From IMG/VR virus record IMGVR_UViG_3300027736_001324, positions 124,001-188,000 of that record: a stretch of 64,000 nucleotides of DNA; one strand, written 5' to 3'. Shown in pieces: positions 1,466 through 55,751 of the stretch. Position 1 is the stretch's first letter; each line of letters opens with the position of its first letter. Under the pieces are notes generated by a model that saw nothing but the letters and a program-made list of their open reading frames with translations, searched no databases and was not told where the DNA came from. Position numbers and translations under genes: made by a program.

Positions 1466-2533
1466 ATGGCAAAACCATTTGACGTATCGAAATTTAGAAA
1501 AGAAATTACTAAGTCAATTGAAGGACTTAGCATAGGATATAACGATCCAACAGATTGGATCAGTACAGGAAATTATGGACTTAATTATCTCATTAGCGGG
1601 GATTTTAATAAAGGCGTTCCTCTTGGTAAAGTTACTGTCTTTGCCGGAGAGTCTGGATCAGGAAAATCATTCATCTGCTCAGGAAACCTCGTCAGACACG
1701 CACAACAACAAGGAATCTACGTTGTCTTAATTGATAGCGAAAACGCCTTAGATGAAAAATGGCTACACGCATTGGGTGTAGATACAAGCGAAACTAAATT
1801 GCTTAAACTAAACATGGCTATGATTGATGATGTGGGTAAGACTATATCAGAATTTATGAAGTCATACAAACTAATGGCAGAAGATGATAAACCAAAAGTA
1901 TTGTTTGTCATTGACAGTCTTGGTATGCTATTGACTCCAACTGACGTTAATCAGTTTGAAGCAGGTGATATGAAAGGTGATATGGGTCGTAAGCCTAAAG
2001 CACTAACAGCACTTGTTCGTAATTGTGTTAATATGTTTGGTAGTCACAATGTAGGATTGGTTGCTACTAATCACACATACGCAAGTCAAGATATGTTTGA
2101 CCCAGATGATAAAATCAGTGGTGGTCAGGGATTTGTTTACGCAAGTTCAATCGTAGTTGCTATGAAGAAACTCAAACTCAAAGAGGATGAAGATGGTAAC
2201 AAGGTTAGTGAAGTAAATGGTATTCGTGCTGCTTGTAAGATTATGAAAACTCGCTATGCGAAACCTTTTGAAAGTATTCAAGTTAAGATTCCGTATGAAA
2301 CAGGCATGAGTCCTTATAGTGGCTTAACTGATATGCTTGAGAAGTCTAATGCATTGAAAAAAGAAGGCAACAGTTTAGTTTATGTAACTGAAGATGGTGA
2401 AATTCTTAAAGCGTTTCGTAAGGGTTGGGAAGCCAACAAAGACGGAATACTTGACAAGGTGATGCTTGAATATACTGGAAAAACTAAAAGTGTGATAAGT
2501 AATGTAACATCTACGGAGGAAGTTACAGAATGA
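1466..2533 (+). CDS. uvsX: RecA-like recombinase UvsX
   Basis: Walker A GESGSGKS, IDSENALD, VIDSLG, NHTY and SGG motifs. Confidence 0.93.
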   Translation: MAKPFDVSKFRKEITKSIEGLSIGYNDPTDWISTGNYGLNYLISGDFNKGVPLGKVTVFAGESGSGKSFICSGNLVRHAQQQGIYVVLIDSENALDEKWLHALGVDTSETKLLKLNMAMIDDVGKTISEFMKSYKLMAEDDKPKVLFVIDSLGMLLTPTDVNQFEAGDMKGDMGRKPKALTALVRNCVNMFGSHNVGLVATNHTYASQDMFDPDDKISGGQGFVYASSIVVAMKKLKLKEDEDGNKVSEVNGIRAACKIMKTRYAKPFESIQVKIPYETGMSPYSGLTDMLEKSNALKKEGNSLVYVTEDGEILKAFRKGWEANKDGILDKVMLEYTGKTKSVISNVTSTEEVTE

Positions 2534-8953: not shown

Positions 8954-9454
8954 ATGAGAATTTTGACCCTAGATAACGAATACTATAACTTAGAGACATT
9001 GCCAGAGGAGATAGATGATTTACGATTTGCAATATTGGACAACAGTAATCCAAGCAATGTAGATTATCATTATATACCATTAATCTTTTTAGAAAGTTTT
9101 AATGCCCCGGCACTTGTATTGAAGATTGGTAAACACACAATTAAAATGCCAGTGGATTGGCAAATATTGATTGGTGAAAAAGAGCATGGCGATTTAGAAA
9201 CATTGCCACTAACAAGTATCAATGATAGAGGATTTAATGCGTTTGAGTTTAATCCGTTAACTAGTTTTAGTCCTACCTTTCTACCTATTGAGATTGTAGA
9301 TATATACCACGATGTAACATGGTATGCTCCCCGATTAAAGAACGGGCAGTTTCTGTGTGTACCGTTGAATGATGGGCCTAAACCCGAATGTGTATATTTT
9401 GTAAAAGAAATTAGTCGTAACTGTGAGATAATAGATTATAGTCAGGCATTCTAA
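8954..9454 (+). CDS. hypothetical beta-rich protein, possibly a degenerate stand-alone Hint-like fold
   Basis: 166-aa ORF; pattern VLKIGKHTIKMPVDWQILIG ... IEIVDIYHDVTWYAPRLKNGQFLCV. Confidence 0.6.
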   Translation: MRILTLDNEYYNLETLPEEIDDLRFAILDNSNPSNVDYHYIPLIFLESFNAPALVLKIGKHTIKMPVDWQILIGEKEHGDLETLPLTSINDRGFNAFEFNPLTSFSPTFLPIEIVDIYHDVTWYAPRLKNGQFLCVPLNDGPKPECVYFVKEISRNCEIIDYSQAF

Positions 9455-10047
9455 TGGCAACAAGAAAAGTAGCAGTACCCGTTGATGAAAAATTTGACAA
9501 ACAAGATTTAGACTTGTTTGAGGTCCTTGCCGCATTAGATAAGAAAGATTATGATTTCTTTGATAGACTATCACCCGAACAACAAAAAAAGTTTGTCCCG
9601 TTTACAATGATACAATGGCTAAGTGCTATTAAAGGTAGTGAGGGATTAAGTCGTTATTATGTAATGAGTACAGCAGAGTATGCGAACAAGTATCTGTTCA
9701 ATGAGAATATTCAAAAGCATCCTAAACTACAATGGTTGATGATGTGTGCTAGTAGCCCGGGCTCAGGTAAACAATTCCATCAGTGGATACCTAACATCAG
9801 CCCTAAGGTAAGTAAATTACAAGCAGCAGCTAAACTAAAAGATATTAAAGAGTATTACAAGAAGATATATCCTAGAGCAGATAGTGATGATATTGACGCA
9901 GTAAGTGAAGCGTTTGTAGTTAATCAAAAACGCAAACTTAAATTAGCAGAATTGTTTCCTAATATGAAACTAACAGACATTGAGACATTAAATGAAACTA
10001 TTACTGAAGAACAACTTAAGCAATATGAAAGAGACCTCGGCAATTAA
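9454..10047 (+). CDS. probable clamp-loader small subunit (T4 gp62-like)
   Basis: KKFVPFTMIQWLS...ANKY...QWLM...KQFHQWI resembles the gp62 pattern; TAATG coupling. Confidence 0.5.
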   Translation: MATRKVAVPVDEKFDKQDLDLFEVLAALDKKDYDFFDRLSPEQQKKFVPFTMIQWLSAIKGSEGLSRYYVMSTAEYANKYLFNENIQKHPKLQWLMMCASSPGSGKQFHQWIPNISPKVSKLQAAAKLKDIKEYYKKIYPRADSDDIDAVSEAFVVNQKRKLKLAELFPNMKLTDIETLNETITEEQLKQYERDLGN

Positions 10048-10726
10048 GGCAGCAAAGTATGGCTGTGAATTTTGTAAGAGGGAGTTCTTGCGTGAATCAA
10101 CCACGCTTAGTCATGTATGTGAGCAGAAGCGTAGATGGTTAGATAAAGACAATCACGGCAATCGTATTGGGTTTCAATGTTGGTTGGAGTTTTATAAAAA
10201 GAATACATCAAAACGAAAGAATCTTAAGCAAGAAGATTTTATTAAGAATCCATATTACATTGCGTTTGTTAAGTTTGGTAATTATTGTGTCAACATCAAT
10301 GCGATAAATATTCCAAGATTTACTGATTGGTTATTAAAGAATCAAGTTAAGATTGACAATTGGTGTAGTGATAGTACATACACTAAATATCTAATTGAGT
10401 TTTTGAGACATGAAGATCCATTTGATGCTATACATCGTAGCATTGAAAAATGTATAGAAATGGCAAGTGACGCTAACATACAGCCACATGACTTATTGAG
10501 ATATGGCAATGCAAATAAGATTTGTTATGCGATAACAACGGGTAAGATTAGTCCATGGTTGTTGTATCAAAGCGACAGCGGGGTCCATTTCTTAGATGGA
10601 TTAAATGAAGGCCATGTTAAAATGATCATTGATTATATAAATCCAGAACAGTGGGCAATAAGGTTTAAACGTGATGCAGAACTTACGAAACGAATTAAAG
10701 ACACCCTCGGTGAAGCAGGGTACTAG
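10025..10726 (+). CDS. hypothetical protein with N-terminal zinc finger
   Basis: CEFCKREF...HVC. Confidence 0.7.
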   Translation: MKETSAIKAAKYGCEFCKREFLRESTTLSHVCEQKRRWLDKDNHGNRIGFQCWLEFYKKNTSKRKNLKQEDFIKNPYYIAFVKFGNYCVNINAINIPRFTDWLLKNQVKIDNWCSDSTYTKYLIEFLRHEDPFDAIHRSIEKCIEMASDANIQPHDLLRYGNANKICYAITTGKISPWLLYQSDSGVHFLDGLNEGHVKMIIDYINPEQWAIRFKRDAELTKRIKDTLGEAGY

Positions 10727-10907
10727 GGTTCGTATCCCTTGGATGAAAGGTGATACAATTAGTGATTGGGATGAAACTTGTATTTGGGCAATGGAACAAT
10801 TTGATTTGCCGGGTGGGAAGTTTTACACACACATGACAGAAGATTATATGGATTTTGTATTTAAAGATGAGCGTGATGCGATACATTTTAGTTTAAGATG
10901 GTTATGA
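10710..10907 (+). CDS. FxLRW-family small protein 1 (GTG start inferred)
   Basis: ends FVFKDERDAIHFSLRWL. Confidence 0.75.
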   Translation: MKQGTRVRIPWMKGDTISDWDETCIWAMEQFDLPGGKFYTHMTEDYMDFVFKDERDAIHFSLRWL

Positions 10908-11119
10908 GAAGATGGGAAGATATACGACCGGGTTGGCATGAACGTGTTATTAAACTAGATGAAAACCGCCGGCAACTGCATCGTATTGAAATAATAGATT
11001 GGGTATGTAATAAAATTGAAAATTATGAAAGGCACACATTGTGCACCTGGGATGAATTTGAAGTAAGAATAAAATTTAGATATGAACGAGACTACATTTT
11101 TTGTAGTTTAAGATGGTAA
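10904..11119 (+). CDS. FxLRW-family small protein 2
   Basis: ATGA overlap; ends IKFRYERDYIFCSLRW. Confidence 0.75.
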   Translation: MRRWEDIRPGWHERVIKLDENRRQLHRIEIIDWVCNKIENYERHTLCTWDEFEVRIKFRYERDYIFCSLRW

Positions 11120-11361
11120 CAAAAACAAAACAAGTAACTTATAAATATGTGGCCAGATTATGGGGCGCAGACTATGCCGCCCTGTTAATTTGGCTACAAA
11201 AAAATATAGGCAAATTAGTTGCCGCTAAGCCTATTGTTGCCTGGGAAGGACAAGGTTGGTATATGATATTAGTACAAGGCAACCATGGAGACCCTTATTG
11301 TGATATACATTTTGTAAATAAGAAACATTTAAAACTTTTGGAAAAAGACTGGGTTGAATGA
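11113..11361 (+). CDS. FxLRW-family small protein 3 (divergent)
   Basis: central LIWLQKNIG; ends IHFVNKKHLKLLEKDWVE. Confidence 0.65.
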   Translation: MVTKTKQVTYKYVARLWGADYAALLIWLQKNIGKLVAAKPIVAWEGQGWYMILVQGNHGDPYCDIHFVNKKHLKLLEKDWVE

Positions 11362-11660
11362 TAAAGAAACGTGCCATGGCTAACAATAGATGGGTATCTG
11401 ATTTAGCAAATCAATGGATAGATGAAATCAACGTGAAACGCCTTGAAACTGGTTATGCTGACAATCAACCTAAATGGCCCTACTGGGTTCGTCCACACAA
11501 CTACGAGGAGAAAGAGTGGTATGACATGGACAAATGGCTGCTAAACATAATGGGTGATAATAATTGGCATAAAGAAAACGCACGTTGGGTAGGCAGCAAT
11601 CGTAAGTATTGGTTCCGTGATGAAGCAGATAGAACCTTTTTCATATTGAGATGGTCATGA
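11358..11660 (+). CDS. FxLRW-family small protein 4
   Basis: ATGA overlap; ends YWFRDEADRTFFILRWS. Confidence 0.78.
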   Translation: MIKKRAMANNRWVSDLANQWIDEINVKRLETGYADNQPKWPYWVRPHNYEEKEWYDMDKWLLNIMGDNNWHKENARWVGSNRKYWFRDEADRTFFILRWS

Positions 11661-11899
11661 ACAGCAAACAGCGTAGAAAAGAAAAACGTGATATTGATAA
11701 GAATTATCACAAGGTACATCTTACAGTACGCCCAGGAATGAATTGGACTGATTGGTGTGATCAAGTTGCGGAAATGGTTAGGTGGGTTAGTGAACATACT
11801 AGGCGTGATTGTTGTTTGCAAAAAAATGAGTGGGCTGGTAGTACATTCTATTTCGTAGACGCAAAAGATGCTACACATTTTATATTGAGATGGTCATGA
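11657..11899 (+). CDS. FxLRW-family small protein 5
   Basis: ATGA overlap; ends FYFVDAKDATHFILRWS. Confidence 0.78.
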   Translation: MNSKQRRKEKRDIDKNYHKVHLTVRPGMNWTDWCDQVAEMVRWVSEHTRRDCCLQKNEWAGSTFYFVDAKDATHFILRWS

Positions 11900-12156
11900 T
11901 AGATATAGAACACGAATACATTGACAAACTTGCTAAAGATATGGCTGACAGCATTGATACAGAAGTATTGTATAATGCTATGGGTTGGACTGTTGTTAAC
12001 ATACCGCATCCATGGTACATTCCTAGTGTGCGTAATAGTGTAACAGATTGGTTAGAAGAAAATAAAATTGAATATCATGAATATCATTGTTGGGACGGCA
12101 GAATTGCTTTCAAAGAAGGTAGTGATGCTACATTTTTCATATTGAGGTGGTCATGA
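11896..12156 (+). CDS. FxLRW-family small protein 6
   Basis: ATGA overlap; ends IAFKEGSDATFFILRWS. Confidence 0.78.
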   Translation: MIDIEHEYIDKLAKDMADSIDTEVLYNAMGWTVVNIPHPWYIPSVRNSVTDWLEENKIEYHEYHCWDGRIAFKEGSDATFFILRWS

Positions 12157-12398
12157 GTAAATTTACACACAAAACAGAACGCTATTTTGGTAGCAAAGTT
12201 AATATACATACTATCTCTTGGAAGAACCAAGATGATGTTGACCCTAAAGAAATCAAGAAATGGTGTAAAAAGAATTACGGCAATTCAGGGTATGATGATG
12301 AAACTGGAAGTAATCGTTGGGTAGATAATATTAAGCAATGTGAGATAATGCTTACCCGTGACGAAGATTTAACATTGTTTTTATTGCGCTGGGAATGA
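12153..12398 (+). CDS. FxLRW-family small protein 7
   Basis: ATGA overlap; ends IMLTRDEDLTLFLLRWE. Confidence 0.78.
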   Translation: MSKFTHKTERYFGSKVNIHTISWKNQDDVDPKEIKKWCKKNYGNSGYDDETGSNRWVDNIKQCEIMLTRDEDLTLFLLRWE

Positions 12399-12598
12399 AA
12401 TCTGTAACCATCTACGGCAAAAGTGCGAATGAAGTAATAGAAATATTACATCAAATGCAAGCACACGGCTGGACTGATGGAGTAGATTTTGATTGGGCAT
12501 ATCATCGTTCTTCCACATATGATACAAGAGATCGCCGAGCAGTGTTTAATTTCTACAAAGAAGAATACAGTACTTACTTTGCATTGAGATGGGTATGA
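12395..12598 (+). CDS. FxLRW-family small protein 8
   Basis: ATGA overlap; ends FNFYKEEYSTYFALRWV. Confidence 0.78.
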   Translation: MKSVTIYGKSANEVIEILHQMQAHGWTDGVDFDWAYHRSSTYDTRDRRAVFNFYKEEYSTYFALRWV

Positions 12599-12864
12599 CC
12601 AATATATCAAAATCATTTCAAGATTATGATGACGATGATCCGGCATTACATCAACGAAAGAATCGTTGGAAGTATTGGGAAGCATTGAAAAAAGTTCGTG
12701 TAGAGTACATGGAAAACAAAACTGATTTTGACGCATATGATTTTGAAGATTATCTACAAAAGAAGTACGGTGTAAGAATGAATATTACCAATGGCAATAT
12801 AACAGATGGTTATCAGATAGTAGATGAAAAACTCTATTTAATATTTTTATTAAAATGGGGATGA
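12595..12864 (+). CDS. FxLRW-family small protein 9
   Basis: ATGA overlap; ends YQIVDEKLYLIFLLKWG. Confidence 0.75.
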   Translation: MTNISKSFQDYDDDDPALHQRKNRWKYWEALKKVRVEYMENKTDFDAYDFEDYLQKKYGVRMNITNGNITDGYQIVDEKLYLIFLLKWG

Positions 12865-12865
12865 T

Positions 12866-13138
12866 ATGGCAATAAAATACACAGAATGTTTCCATCCAGC
12901 ATATCCCAATGCCTCAGGCTCTTTATGTAAGGATAACAAATATAAAGCAGGACACAAAACAGTCTATCAAAGAGATTGTAGATATCATAAAGAGGATCCA
13001 TCTATCATTGTAAAATGGATGAGAAGAAATTTTGGTGAAAGACACCAAGGTTGGGACTTCTCTTTAGCTGGAGGATGTGTTACAATAGAGTTGTGGGATG
13101 ATAGATTTATAACAATGTATGAAATGTGGCAGATGTAA
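12866..13138 (+). CDS. FxLRW-family small protein 10 (divergent)
   Basis: central VKWMRRNFG; ends IELWDDRFITMYEMWQM. Confidence 0.7.
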   Translation: MAIKYTECFHPAYPNASGSLCKDNKYKAGHKTVYQRDCRYHKEDPSIIVKWMRRNFGERHQGWDFSLAGGCVTIELWDDRFITMYEMWQM

Positions 13139-13686
13139 TGGCAAATGATATAATGATTGATTTGGAGACACTTGACACAAGTCCATATTGTGTTATATTA
13201 ACTATAGGAGCTGTGCGGTTTGATCCTAAGGGTAATGGTGTAGTAGAACGATTAGAATTGCGTCCTACGATTGAAGAACAGACAGAAAAATATGATAGGA
13301 TAATTGATGACAGTACAATTGAATGGTGGGCAAAACAAAGCCCTGCCGCACTTGAAGAAGCGATGGGAGATGAAGGACGTGTTTCATTTAGTGAATGTAT
13401 GGAAACCCTTTATAAGTTTTGTTGGAATCGCCGTGCTGTGTGGTCTAATGGGGCTGCATTTGATATCGTTGCTTGCGAGACCGCATGGAGGCAACTTGGA
13501 GTGCGAATACCGTGGCCATTCTATACCGTACGAGATACTAGAACGTTGTATGAAGTTGCAGGAGTCAAACTAAGTGATGGCGGACATTCTACTAGTCACA
13601 AAGCAGTAGAAGATGCCGAAAGACAAGCAATTGTTGTACAAAAAGCGTATACTAAACTAATTAAAGCAGGAGTAATGGCACCATGA
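13138..13686 (+). CDS. DEDDh 3'-5' exonuclease (Rv2179c/DexA-like)
   Basis: IMIDLETL, WSNGAAFD, RDTRT and HKAVEDA motifs; TAATG coupling. Confidence 0.85.
   Translation: MANDIMIDLETLDTSPYCVILTIGAVRFDPKGNGVVERLELRPTIEEQTEKYDRIIDDSTIEWWAKQSPAALEEAMGDEGRVSFSECMETLYKFCWNRRAVWSNGAAFDIVACETAWRQLGVRIPWPFYTVRDTRTLYEVAGVKLSDGGHSTSHKAVEDAERQAIVVQKAYTKLIKAGVMAP

Positions 13687-47360: not shown

Positions 47361-55751
<8,391 letters not shown>

What the first reader, a model, noticed from the sequence alone, without database searches (positions are those of the whole stretch)
10893..12868. The array junctions form a repeated DNA element that encodes LRW, stop and next start together
Seen: ATATTGAGATGGTCATGA occurs identically at 11643-11660 and 11882-11899, and with one mismatch at 12139-12156. 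TAGTTTAAGATGGT is shared by the ends of copies 1 and 2, and TTGAGATGGGTATGA ends copy 8. Most junctions are ATGA stop/start overlaps. The Leu-Arg-Trp codons give a purine-rich GAGATGG or GAGGTGG just before the next ATG. Inference: the junction works as both a translational-coupling signal and a microhomology site. UvsX-type recombination at it could insert, delete or swap whole cassettes in register, like an integrase-free gene-cassette array.
Basis: partly seen in the sequence, partly recalled or inferred. Interest (0 to 1): 0.7.

Follow-up and report, generated by a model that had tools for sequence, protein, structure and literature searches.

The report
Hypervariable phage gene array with dual-coded junctions
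A freshwater jumbo phage carries ten tandem small genes whose shared protein tail (Leu-Arg-Trp) also spells the ribosome-binding site and overlapping stop/start of the next gene, and related phages gain, lose and reorder whole genes at these junctions.

Summary
The window holds ten tandem paralogous small ORFs (10674-13138, + strand), eight ending in F-x-L-R-W, and seven of the ten junctions are ATGA overlaps.

The proteins are genuine: dN/dS is 0.15-0.38 and AlphaFold gives a confident beta-alpha-beta-beta-alpha fold. They belong to a large virus-only family with no Pfam or PHROG model.

The junction "repeat" is mainly the conserved C-terminal helix. Synonymous sites there drift as fast as in the gene bodies. 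However, the Leu and Arg codons are strongly biased to TTG and AGR, giving GAGG/GAGA 5 nt before the next ATG. This bias appears only when the next start is adjacent, which supports translational coupling.

In 47 related metagenomic loci the same two flanking genes enclose 5-30 cassettes in 35 arrangements. Cassettes are gained, lost and reordered whole, and six of the seven mapped indel breakpoints lie within the last 26 nt of a cassette.

Of the exact direct repeats of 15 nt or more inside arrays, 84 of 101 are junction-to-junction in register. Some events use only ATGA at junctions without LRW, and one recent deletion is out of register. A specific role for UvsX is untested.

Verdict: a new variant of boundary-sequence/PeSL-type modular shuffling.

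The parts
10674..10907 (+). Cassette 1, tail FSLRWL. Start taken as ATG 10674 (GTG 10671 is also in frame). It overlaps the end of the upstream anchor gene. It opens the array in 42 of 47 related loci.
   Evidence: dN/dS 0.30
10904..11119 (+). Cassette 2, tail CSLRW. It lies after cassette 9 in more distant relatives, so array order changes.
   Evidence: dN/dS 0.21
11113..11361 (+). Cassette 3, the same family but with a diverged tail (KDWVE). Its only start is the ATG formed by the AGA-TGG (Arg-Trp) codons of cassette 2. It is absent or replaced by cassette 'd' in relatives.
11358..11660 (+). Cassette 4, tail FFILRWS. A 59%-identical homolog sits in an unrelated phage lineage with an almost identical junction.
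11657..11899 (+). Cassette 5, tail HFILRWS. It is flanked by the exact 18-nt direct repeat and is absent from L005, L007, L008, L011, L016, L043, L023 and L026.
11896..12156 (+). Cassette 6, tail FFILRWS, with a variable presence.
12153..12398 (+). Cassette 7, tail FLLRWE. It has 13 different upstream and 8 different downstream neighbours among relatives.
12395..12598 (+). Cassette 8, tail FALRWV, the minimal 67-aa domain. The AlphaFold model has pLDDT 92.9 with a beta-alpha-beta-beta-alpha fold.
12595..12864 (+). Cassette 9, tail FLLKWG.
12866..13138 (+). Cassette 10, the same family with a diverged tail (YEMWQM). It is the usual last member of the array.
11643..11660 (+). Junction 4>5: ATATTGAGATGGTCATGA. 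It encodes Ile-Leu-Arg-Trp-Ser-stop, an SD-like GAGA, and an ATGA stop/start overlap.
11882..11899 (+). Junction 5>6, an identical 18-mer.
12139..12156 (+). Junction 6>7, the same 18-mer with AGG for AGA. The 21-mer ending here is identical to a junction in the unrelated locus L084.
12584..12598 (+). Junction 8>9: TTGAGATGGGTATGA.
9992..10726 (+). Conserved upstream anchor gene (phrog_11058, function unknown), used to find 430 related loci.
13126..13686 (+). Conserved downstream anchor: a DnaQ-like exonuclease (phrog_255).
1466..2533 (+). UvsX-like recombinase (phrog_97, E 2e-68). With the SSB at 162-1166, this is the phage's own recombination machinery. Its role at the junctions is untested.

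Best explanation
The region is a hyperplastic array of translationally coupled cassettes, each encoding one member of a large, uncharacterised, virus-only family of small beta-alpha-beta-beta-alpha proteins.

The family's conserved C-terminal helix ends in F-x-L-R-W. Because each ORF's stop overlaps the next start (ATGA), the last codons of one gene serve as the ribosome-binding region of the next. Selection therefore picks TTG-AGR-TGG for Leu-Arg-Trp, which places GAGG/GAGA 5 nt before the next ATG. The result is a 15-25 nt near-identical direct repeat at every gene boundary.

These repeats are the longest homologies in the array. Rare short-homology events between them delete, duplicate or exchange whole cassettes in register. 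Candidate mechanisms are replication slippage or template switching, single-strand annealing, or relaxed recombinase-mediated exchange, within one genome or between co-infecting relatives. Selection for uninterrupted coupling then removes most out-of-register products.

Shown: the family, the fold, purifying selection, the conditional codon bias, the whole-cassette variation, and the location of breakpoints and repeats. Inferred: actual translational coupling, the molecular recombination mechanism, and the biological role of the proteins. The proteins are probably dispensable host-interaction or counter-defence factors, judging from their presence/absence pattern; confidence in that is low.
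For: Family and reality of the genes:
- All ten ORFs align.
- dN/dS is 0.15-0.38.
- The AlphaFold model has pLDDT 92.9.
- A profile search finds 2365 clusters (50% identity) at E<=1e-3, with the domain at the extreme C-terminus.
- There is no Pfam or PHROG hit.

Coupling:
- 203 of 325 unique junctions are ATGA overlaps.
- Over 54 independent cassette clusters, Leu is TTG in 37/54 against 22% in the bodies (P 2e-13). Arg is AGR in 47/54 against 44% (P 4e-11).
- The bias depends on an adjacent start. TTG is 39/55 against 2/12 (P 8e-4), and AGG/AAG is 30/55 against 0/12 (P 3e-4).
- AGGA, AAGG, GGAG and GAGA are 5-6.5x enriched upstream of the genome's long ORFs.

Shuffling:
- The distance between anchors ranges from 1138 to 7394 bp. 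Loci hold 5-30 cassettes in 35 arrangements over 47 loci, and 10 arrangements were seen in at least two loci, mostly from different metagenome assemblies.
- Junction sequences of 14 close relatives show intact tail+head joins in every new adjacency.
- Six of the seven mapped indel intervals lie at -26..0 relative to the upstream stop.
- A CGT Arg-codon marker appears in all three 4>6 junctions of close relatives and in one 5>6 junction (L010). This suggests a crossover upstream of the Arg codon, inside the tail repeat (inference).
- 84 of 101 exact direct repeats of 15 nt or more inside arrays are in-register junction pairs.
- Contigs from the same lake samples break and branch at junction positions.
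- The same architecture and the same polymorphism occur in an unrelated lineage.
Against: - Synonymous divergence in the tail is not lower than in the bodies (0.33 against 0.30), except at the last codon, which overlaps the ATG.
- Several in-register indels occur with only ATGA, AATGA or ATGGCAA microhomology. They include junctions lacking LRW (3>d>4, 9>exonuclease) and foreign families (HFGVEE cassettes, radical SAM genes).
- A 127-bp out-of-register deletion separates two 99.7%-identical loci.
- There is no within-genome homogenisation of tails among close relatives.
- Coupling, recombination intermediates and protein function were not observed directly.
- All comparative data come from metagenomic assemblies.
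Confidence: 0.6

Rival explanations
1. The cause is selection only. The junction similarity is a passive by-product of a conserved protein tail plus the ordinary ATGA/SD arrangement. Indels arise by sequence-independent illegitimate recombination anywhere, and only in-register products survive because they keep the downstream genes translated.
For: Synonymous sites in the tail are not conserved. Events occur at non-LRW junctions with 4-7 nt of microhomology. An out-of-register deletion exists in a very recent pair. There is no recent concerted evolution.
Against: With zero intergenic space, an exact in-register join is about 1 in 10^4-10^5 of random endpoint pairs. Even so, nearly all of the more than 300 distinct junctions are exact. 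The longest repeats are junction pairs (84/101). Several breakpoints map 10-26 nt inside the tail repeat rather than at the ATGA.
Confidence: 0.28
2. The variation is an assembly artefact. De Bruijn assemblers jump between identical junction k-mers and create false cassette deletions or reorderings.
For: Junction repeats reach 18-25 nt, close to the smallest assembler k-mers. Logan unitigs do break at junctions.
Against: Repeats produce contig breaks, not unambiguous false joins. Ten arrangements recur, nine of them in two independent metagenome assemblies. Many indels have only 4-7 nt of shared sequence. Extra cassettes are novel sequences rather than rearranged ones.
Confidence: 0.04
3. A dedicated site-specific system (integron-like recombinase or homing endonuclease) recognises the junction and moves the cassettes.
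For: Cassette-wise mobility resembles that of integrons.
Against: No integrase or endonuclease gene lies in or beside the array. There are no attC-like inverted repeats. The junction sequences are degenerate at synonymous sites. Events also occur at junctions lacking the motif.
Confidence: 0.03
4. The junctions are PeSL-like transcriptional cassettes (promoter plus terminator), and recombination between these regulatory elements shuffles the genes.
For: The genomic setting is analogous to T4-type hyperplastic regions (PMC2839356, PMC4122927).
Against: There is no intergenic DNA. Promoter-like sites number 20 against 23.6 expected, and none of the terminator-like hits lies at a junction on the + strand.
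Confidence: 0.02

Closest known systems
PeSL-mediated modular shuffling in hyperplastic regions of T4-type phages (Arbiol et al. 2010, PMC2839356; Comeau et al. 2014, PMC4122927)
   Same: Both involve clusters of small non-essential ORFs between core genes. Close relatives differ by whole-gene insertions, deletions and replacements that are bounded by a short repeated motif. No integrase is involved, and the phage has UvsX-type recombination genes.
   Different: PeSLs are intergenic promoter-plus-stem-loop terminator cassettes. Here there is no intergenic DNA, promoter or terminator. The repeat is the coding tail of a protein family fused to the SD and the stop/start overlap. Mini-circles have not been shown here.
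Short conserved boundary sequences in phage mosaicism; the Island3 gp67/gp68 case in mycobacteriophages (Pope et al. 2011, PMC3029335)
   Same: In Island3, an inserted gene shares its 18 C-terminal residues, and the corresponding DNA, with the upstream gene. The authors inferred recombination between these gene-end repeats. That is the same geometry as seen here.
   Different: That was a single event in one phage pair. Here it is systematic: a whole protein family supplies the boundary repeat at every junction, over 107 cassette types and several phage lineages. There is also a demonstrable codon bias tied to translation of the next gene.
Integron gene-cassette arrays
   Same: Both are ordered arrays of promoterless single-gene cassettes whose number and order vary between relatives.
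   Different: There is no IntI integrase and no attC or attI sites. Expression here relies on translational coupling rather than on a Pc promoter alone.
Translationally coupled operons with ATGA/TGATG overlaps and an SD inside the upstream ORF (general bacterial and phage knowledge)
   Same: Both show a 4-nt stop/start overlap and an SD-like purine run encoded by the last codons of the upstream gene.
   Different: Here the SD is built from an invariant amino-acid motif shared by all cassettes, so the coupling signal is portable with any cassette.

Membership tests
PeSL regulatory cassettes (T4-type HPRs) | A sigma-70-like early promoter plus a stem-loop terminator in the intergenic space between small ORFs | tested here: not met
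   ORFs overlap by 4 nt. Promoter-like sites number 20 against 23.6+-4.1 expected, and there is no + strand terminator at any junction.
PeSL regulatory cassettes (T4-type HPRs) | Indels and replacements between close relatives are bounded by the repeated motif | tested here: met
PeSL regulatory cassettes (T4-type HPRs) | Excised mini-circles formed by recombination between neighbouring motifs | not testable with these tools
   Only assembled contigs of public runs were available. No back-joints were reported.
Integron cassette array | An adjacent tyrosine-recombinase integrase (IntI) and an attI site | tested here: not met
   The flanking genes are phrog_11058 (function unknown), an exonuclease, helicases and a DNA polymerase piece. 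No integrase was found.
Integron cassette array | An attC imperfect inverted repeat at each cassette end | tested here: not met
   None of the inverted repeats found lies across a junction in an attC-like arrangement.
Boundary-sequence (linker) model of phage modular exchange | Homologous short sequences recur at gene boundaries | tested here: met
   There is a 49-nt repeat family of 63-78% identity and exact repeats of 14-18 nt. 84 of 101 repeats of 15 nt or more are in-register junction pairs.
Boundary-sequence (linker) model of phage modular exchange | Mosaic breakpoints coincide with those sequences | tested here: met
   Six of the seven mapped indel intervals lie at -26..0 from the stop, and all new adjacencies keep intact tails and heads. 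Exceptions: a body deletion and ATGA-only joins.
Translationally coupled operon | Stop/start overlap with an SD-like element within the upstream coding sequence | tested here: met
   7/10 junctions in the window and 203/325 among relatives are ATGA overlaps. There is a conditional TTG/AGR codon bias.
Translationally coupled operon | Downstream translation depends on upstream translation | not testable with these tools
   This needs reporter fusions.
Ferredoxin-like / RRM / ACT fold proteins | Significant structural match to a characterised member | tested here: inconclusive
   The best Foldseek PDB hit has E 0.07. The best VIA-align Z is 7.5 (ACT domain, RRM), which is within the tool's stated background. 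BFVD matches only uncharacterised phage proteins.

The most novel reading that the evidence does not exclude
The F-x-L-R-W tail, SD and ATGA together form a portable 'coding linker' that a very large family of phage accessory proteins has kept. It would make every family member a plug-and-play cassette. Any cassette could then be inserted next to any other, in any phage carrying such an array, and be translated at once, with the shared linker also serving as the recombination substrate. That would be an integrase-free, integron-like gene-exchange system operating across unrelated phage lineages. Two observations are compatible with this: identical 21-mer junctions, and a 59%-identical cassette, in phages of 37% and 45% GC.
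Probability: 0.25. Interest if true: 0.8.

Novelty: new variant of a known kind. Interest (0 to 1): 0.6.

Why it matters
Most phage genes are small ORFans, and how they are gained and lost so cleanly is debated: short boundary homologies, or illegitimate recombination followed by selection. This locus offers many natural replicates of one well-defined boundary (35 arrangements, 107 cassette types, several lineages). At that boundary the protein tail, the ribosome-binding site, the stop/start overlap and the longest local homology all coincide. That makes the question testable by deep sequencing of lysates and by synonymous recoding. The work also flags a very large protein family (over 2,300 clusters at 50% identity) that is confidently foldable and still absent from Pfam and PHROGs. 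Its presence/absence dynamics suggest a host-interaction or counter-defence role.

Tried and rejected
- Pfam and PHROG scans of the ten cassettes and of ten remote family members gave nothing significant.
- blastn and tblastn against 50,697 phage records found no match for the locus or for cassette 4. There was one weak hit (E 0.4), which nevertheless led to a four-cassette mini-array in the cultured Sinorhizobium phage Phosso.
- The search for homologous proteins with the profile returned only three unnamed hits.
- The ESM Atlas returned only viral hypothetical proteins.
- Fold searches (PDB Foldseek, VIA-align wide, AFDB clusters) showed only a generic ferredoxin-like/RRM/ACT resemblance at background level, so no function could be assigned.
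- The within-window same-codon test was not significant (P 0.086).
- The concerted-evolution test was positive over all loci (0.555 against 0.478, P<0.003, with a flat body control), but the effect vanished among close relatives (P 0.83). I treat it as lineage structure, not gene conversion.
- A search for chimeric cassettes between families found none beyond the shared tails.
- The automated exact-microhomology mapping recovered only 7 events, because flanks shorter than 80 nt or below 93% identity were filtered out. The remaining events were read from the printed junctions.
- Runs labelled RNA turned out to be probably DNA from relatives, so there is no expression evidence.
- A first literature search for prior descriptions of such arrays in jumbo or freshwater phages returned nothing relevant.
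Full report
**Setting.** The window is bases 124001-188000 of a 263.7-kb IMG/VR virus record. It belongs to a jumbo myovirus. The window carries a tail sheath gene and a 2,796-aa collagen-like fibre gene. It also carries its own replication and recombination genes: a gp32-like SSB at 162-1166, a UvsX-like recombinase at 1466-2533, helicases and an exonuclease. GC content is about 37%. Runs holding the sequence are freshwater or lake metagenomes.

**Observation.** Between a conserved gene of unknown function (9992-10726, phrog_11058) and a DnaQ-like exonuclease (13126-13686) lie ten same-strand ORFs of 67-100 codons.
- The 18-mer ATATTGAGATGGTCATGA is exact at 11643 and 11882 and has one mismatch at 12139. 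Only 0.11 matches are expected by chance at up to 3 mismatches.
- The other quoted strings are present.
- Seven of the ten junctions are ATGA overlaps.
- Eight ORFs end in F-x-L-R/K-W plus 0-1 residue. No other real ORF in the 263.7-kb record has such a tail.

**What the genes are.**
- All ten ORFs align as one family with the pattern W..(F)G..W...F.F.(D/E)E.D(A)..F.LRW.
- Orthologs from related loci give dN/dS of 0.15-0.38 for every cassette, so these are real proteins.
- With a 49-sequence alignment, AlphaFold2 models the 67-aa cassette 8 at pLDDT 92.9 as beta1-alpha1-beta2-beta3-alpha2. The LRW motif ends the last helix.
- Structure searches give only background-level resemblance to ferredoxin-like, RRM and ACT domains. 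They also match uncharacterised proteins of uncultured phages.
- A profile search of 1.8 billion representatives finds 2365 clusters at E<=1e-3. The domain almost always ends at the protein's C-terminus, and the consensus is WCxxxFGP..RW...F.FRDE.D..F.LRWS.
- Neither Pfam nor PHROGs covers the family.
- Function is unknown.

**Is the junction a DNA element or a protein motif?** It is mostly a protein motif.
- Among orthologs, synonymous differences are as frequent in the last eight codons (0.33) as in the bodies (0.30). The exception is the final codon (0.12), whose third base is the A of the next ATG.
- Among the window's paralogs, the excess of identical codons is marginal: 47 against 37.2+-6.4, P 0.086.

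However, codon choice is not neutral.
- Taking one representative of each of 54 independent LRW-tailed cassette clusters, Leu is TTG in 37/54, against 22% in the bodies of the same genes (P 2e-13).
- Arg is AGA or AGG in 47/54, against 44% in the bodies (P 4e-11). AGG alone accounts for 28/54.
- TTG-AGG-TGG reads GAGGTG, which ends 3 nt before the overlapping ATG, with the GAGG core 5 nt away. The genome's long ORFs show AGGA, AAGG, GGAG and GAGA enriched 5-6.5-fold upstream of their starts.
- The bias is conditional. When the next start overlaps or lies within 4 nt, TTG is 39/55 and AGG/AAG is 30/55. When the next start is farther away or absent, they are 2/12 and 0/12 (Fisher P 8e-4 and 3e-4).

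This is the signature expected if the tail codons double as the ribosome-binding site of the downstream cassette.

**Comparison with relatives.**
- The upstream anchor protein retrieves 430 related viral contigs. Of the 80 loci fetched, 47 contain both anchors.
- The distance between anchors ranges from 1138 to 7394 bp. It already spans 1210-4343 bp among loci whose anchors are 95% or more identical to the window.
- Clustering the 486 intervening ORFs gives 107 cassette types, 5-30 cassettes per locus, and 35 distinct arrangements. Ten arrangements were seen in two or more loci, nine of them from different metagenome assemblies.
- Cassettes are present or absent as whole units. Cassette 2 sits after cassette 9 in a more distant clade. 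Cassette 7 has 13 different upstream and 8 different downstream neighbours.

**Where the breakpoints are.**
- The printed junctions of 14 close relatives show that every novel adjacency joins an intact tail to an intact head.
- Seven indel intervals could be mapped automatically. Six lie between -26 and 0 nt from the upstream stop codon.
- Cassette 5 is flanked by the exact 18-mer in the window. It is missing from eight of the close relatives, where cassette 4 runs directly into cassette 6, 7 or another cassette.
- A rare CGT Arg codon is found in the 5>6 junction of L010 and in the 4>6 junctions of L005, L008 and L016. This suggests that cassette 5 was deleted by a crossover upstream of the Arg codon, within the F-I-L codons of the repeat (this is an inference).
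- Across all arrays, 84 of the 101 exact direct repeats of 15 nt or more are junction-to-junction and in register. Any process whose rate depends on homology length would therefore mostly yield whole-cassette changes.
- Contigs from the same lake samples end or branch at junction coordinates, and several different continuations follow position 12156.

**Limits.**
- Some in-register events involve only ATGA, AATGA or ATGGCAA. They also involve junctions without LRW (3>d>4 and 9>exonuclease).
- A second small-gene family with HFGVEE tails and even radical SAM genes have entered the array in some relatives. The locus is thus a general hyperplastic region, and the stop/start overlap alone can serve as a boundary.
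- Two loci that are 99.7% identical differ by a 127-bp out-of-register deletion inside a cassette, at an imperfect 10-nt microhomology. That deletion removes the cassette's tail and SD.

Microhomology deletions therefore occur off-junction too, and selection probably purges them. I conclude that both junction homology and selection for intact coupling shape the pattern. I rate junction-mediated recombination as the main source of in-register change at about 0.6, and the selection-only rival at about 0.28.

A test for gene conversion among tails was positive over all loci but null among close relatives. I do not count it as support. UvsX dependence is untested. From general knowledge, repeats of 25 nt or less are short for efficient UvsX/RecA-type exchange, so slippage, single-strand annealing or relaxed recombination are equally plausible.

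**Generality.**
- An unrelated phage lineage (45% GC) has an array flanked by NAD synthase, cell-wall hydrolase, WYL and SOD genes. It shares almost no genes with this genome.
- That lineage carries at least 12 LRW cassettes joined by TTGAGGTGGTCATGA. Three relatives differ by whole cassettes.
- One of its cassettes is 59% identical to window cassette 4. Its final 21 nt are identical to window 12136-12156.
- The cultured Sinorhizobium jumbo phage Phosso has a four-cassette mini-array ending in FKLRWS. This offers an experimental handle.

**Relation to known systems.**
- The closest precedents are PeSL-mediated shuffling in T4-type hyperplastic regions (PMC2839356, PMC4122927) and the boundary-sequence model of phage mosaicism. 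The latter includes the single Island3 gp67/gp68 case, where a shared C-terminal coding end bounded a gene insertion (PMC3029335).
- This locus is not a PeSL array: there is no intergenic DNA, promoter or terminator.
- It is not an integron: there is no integrase and no attC.
- It is a new variant of boundary-sequence shuffling in which the repeat is a dual-coded protein tail/SD/stop-start unit supplied by a whole protein family.

**Assembly artefact.** I consider this unlikely. Arrangements recur in independent assemblies, many joins share only 4-7 nt, and the extra cassettes are novel sequences rather than rearranged ones.

Noticed in passing
window 47361-55751: A 2,796-aa ORF matches many collagen-like tail-fibre PHROGs. 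Its GC content is locally 0.49-0.51, against about 0.37 for the rest of the window.
   Followed up: partly
L010:10764-11854: Four tandem cassettes of a second small-protein family, with tails ...HFGVEE/FGVK and no Pfam hit, sit as a block inside the array of a 96%-identical relative. They are joined to the LRW cassettes in register.
   Followed up: partly
L075:6043-10841: In one relative, the array holds a 418-aa radical SAM gene and two paralogous genes of about 515 aa (B12-binding radical SAM). The next LRW cassette (z41 type) has lost its first ~4 codons and its start codon at the right edge of this insertion.
   Followed up: partly
L069:9860-10400 vs L079:3115-3520: Two otherwise near-identical loci differ by a 127-bp, out-of-frame deletion inside one cassette, at an imperfect AnTTGATnGG microhomology. 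It looks like a recent, probably inactivating event.
   Followed up: yes
L082, L083, L084 (ENA/Logan contigs): An unrelated phage lineage of 45% GC carries 12 or more LRW cassettes between NAD synthase/hydrolase and WYL/eIF-1a/SOD genes. It shows the same junction and whole-cassette differences among three relatives.
   Followed up: partly
L085 (Sinorhizobium phage Phosso PV764938, 12938-14020): This cultured 469-kb phage has four ATGA-linked ORFs with tails FKLRFA, FKLVFG, FKLAHA and FKLRWS, all annotated as hypothetical. It is a possible experimental model for the family.
   Followed up: partly
window 9454-10047 and 9992-10726: The two conserved genes upstream of the array overlap by 56 nt in different frames as called. 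The true start of the second gene may lie further downstream.
   Followed up: no
window 10907 -> 13137 (run X25): One contig from a relative appears to join the stop of cassette 1 directly to the exonuclease start, which would be an array reduced to a single cassette. Only 21 nt lie on one side, so the evidence is weak.
   Followed up: no
window 11113 (and relatives): Cassette 3 has no start other than the ATG created by the Arg-Trp codons (AGA TGG) of cassette 2. The same in-frame ATG/GTG precedes the ATGA start at several other junctions (reading MVM...), so the true start codon of those cassettes is ambiguous.
   Followed up: partly
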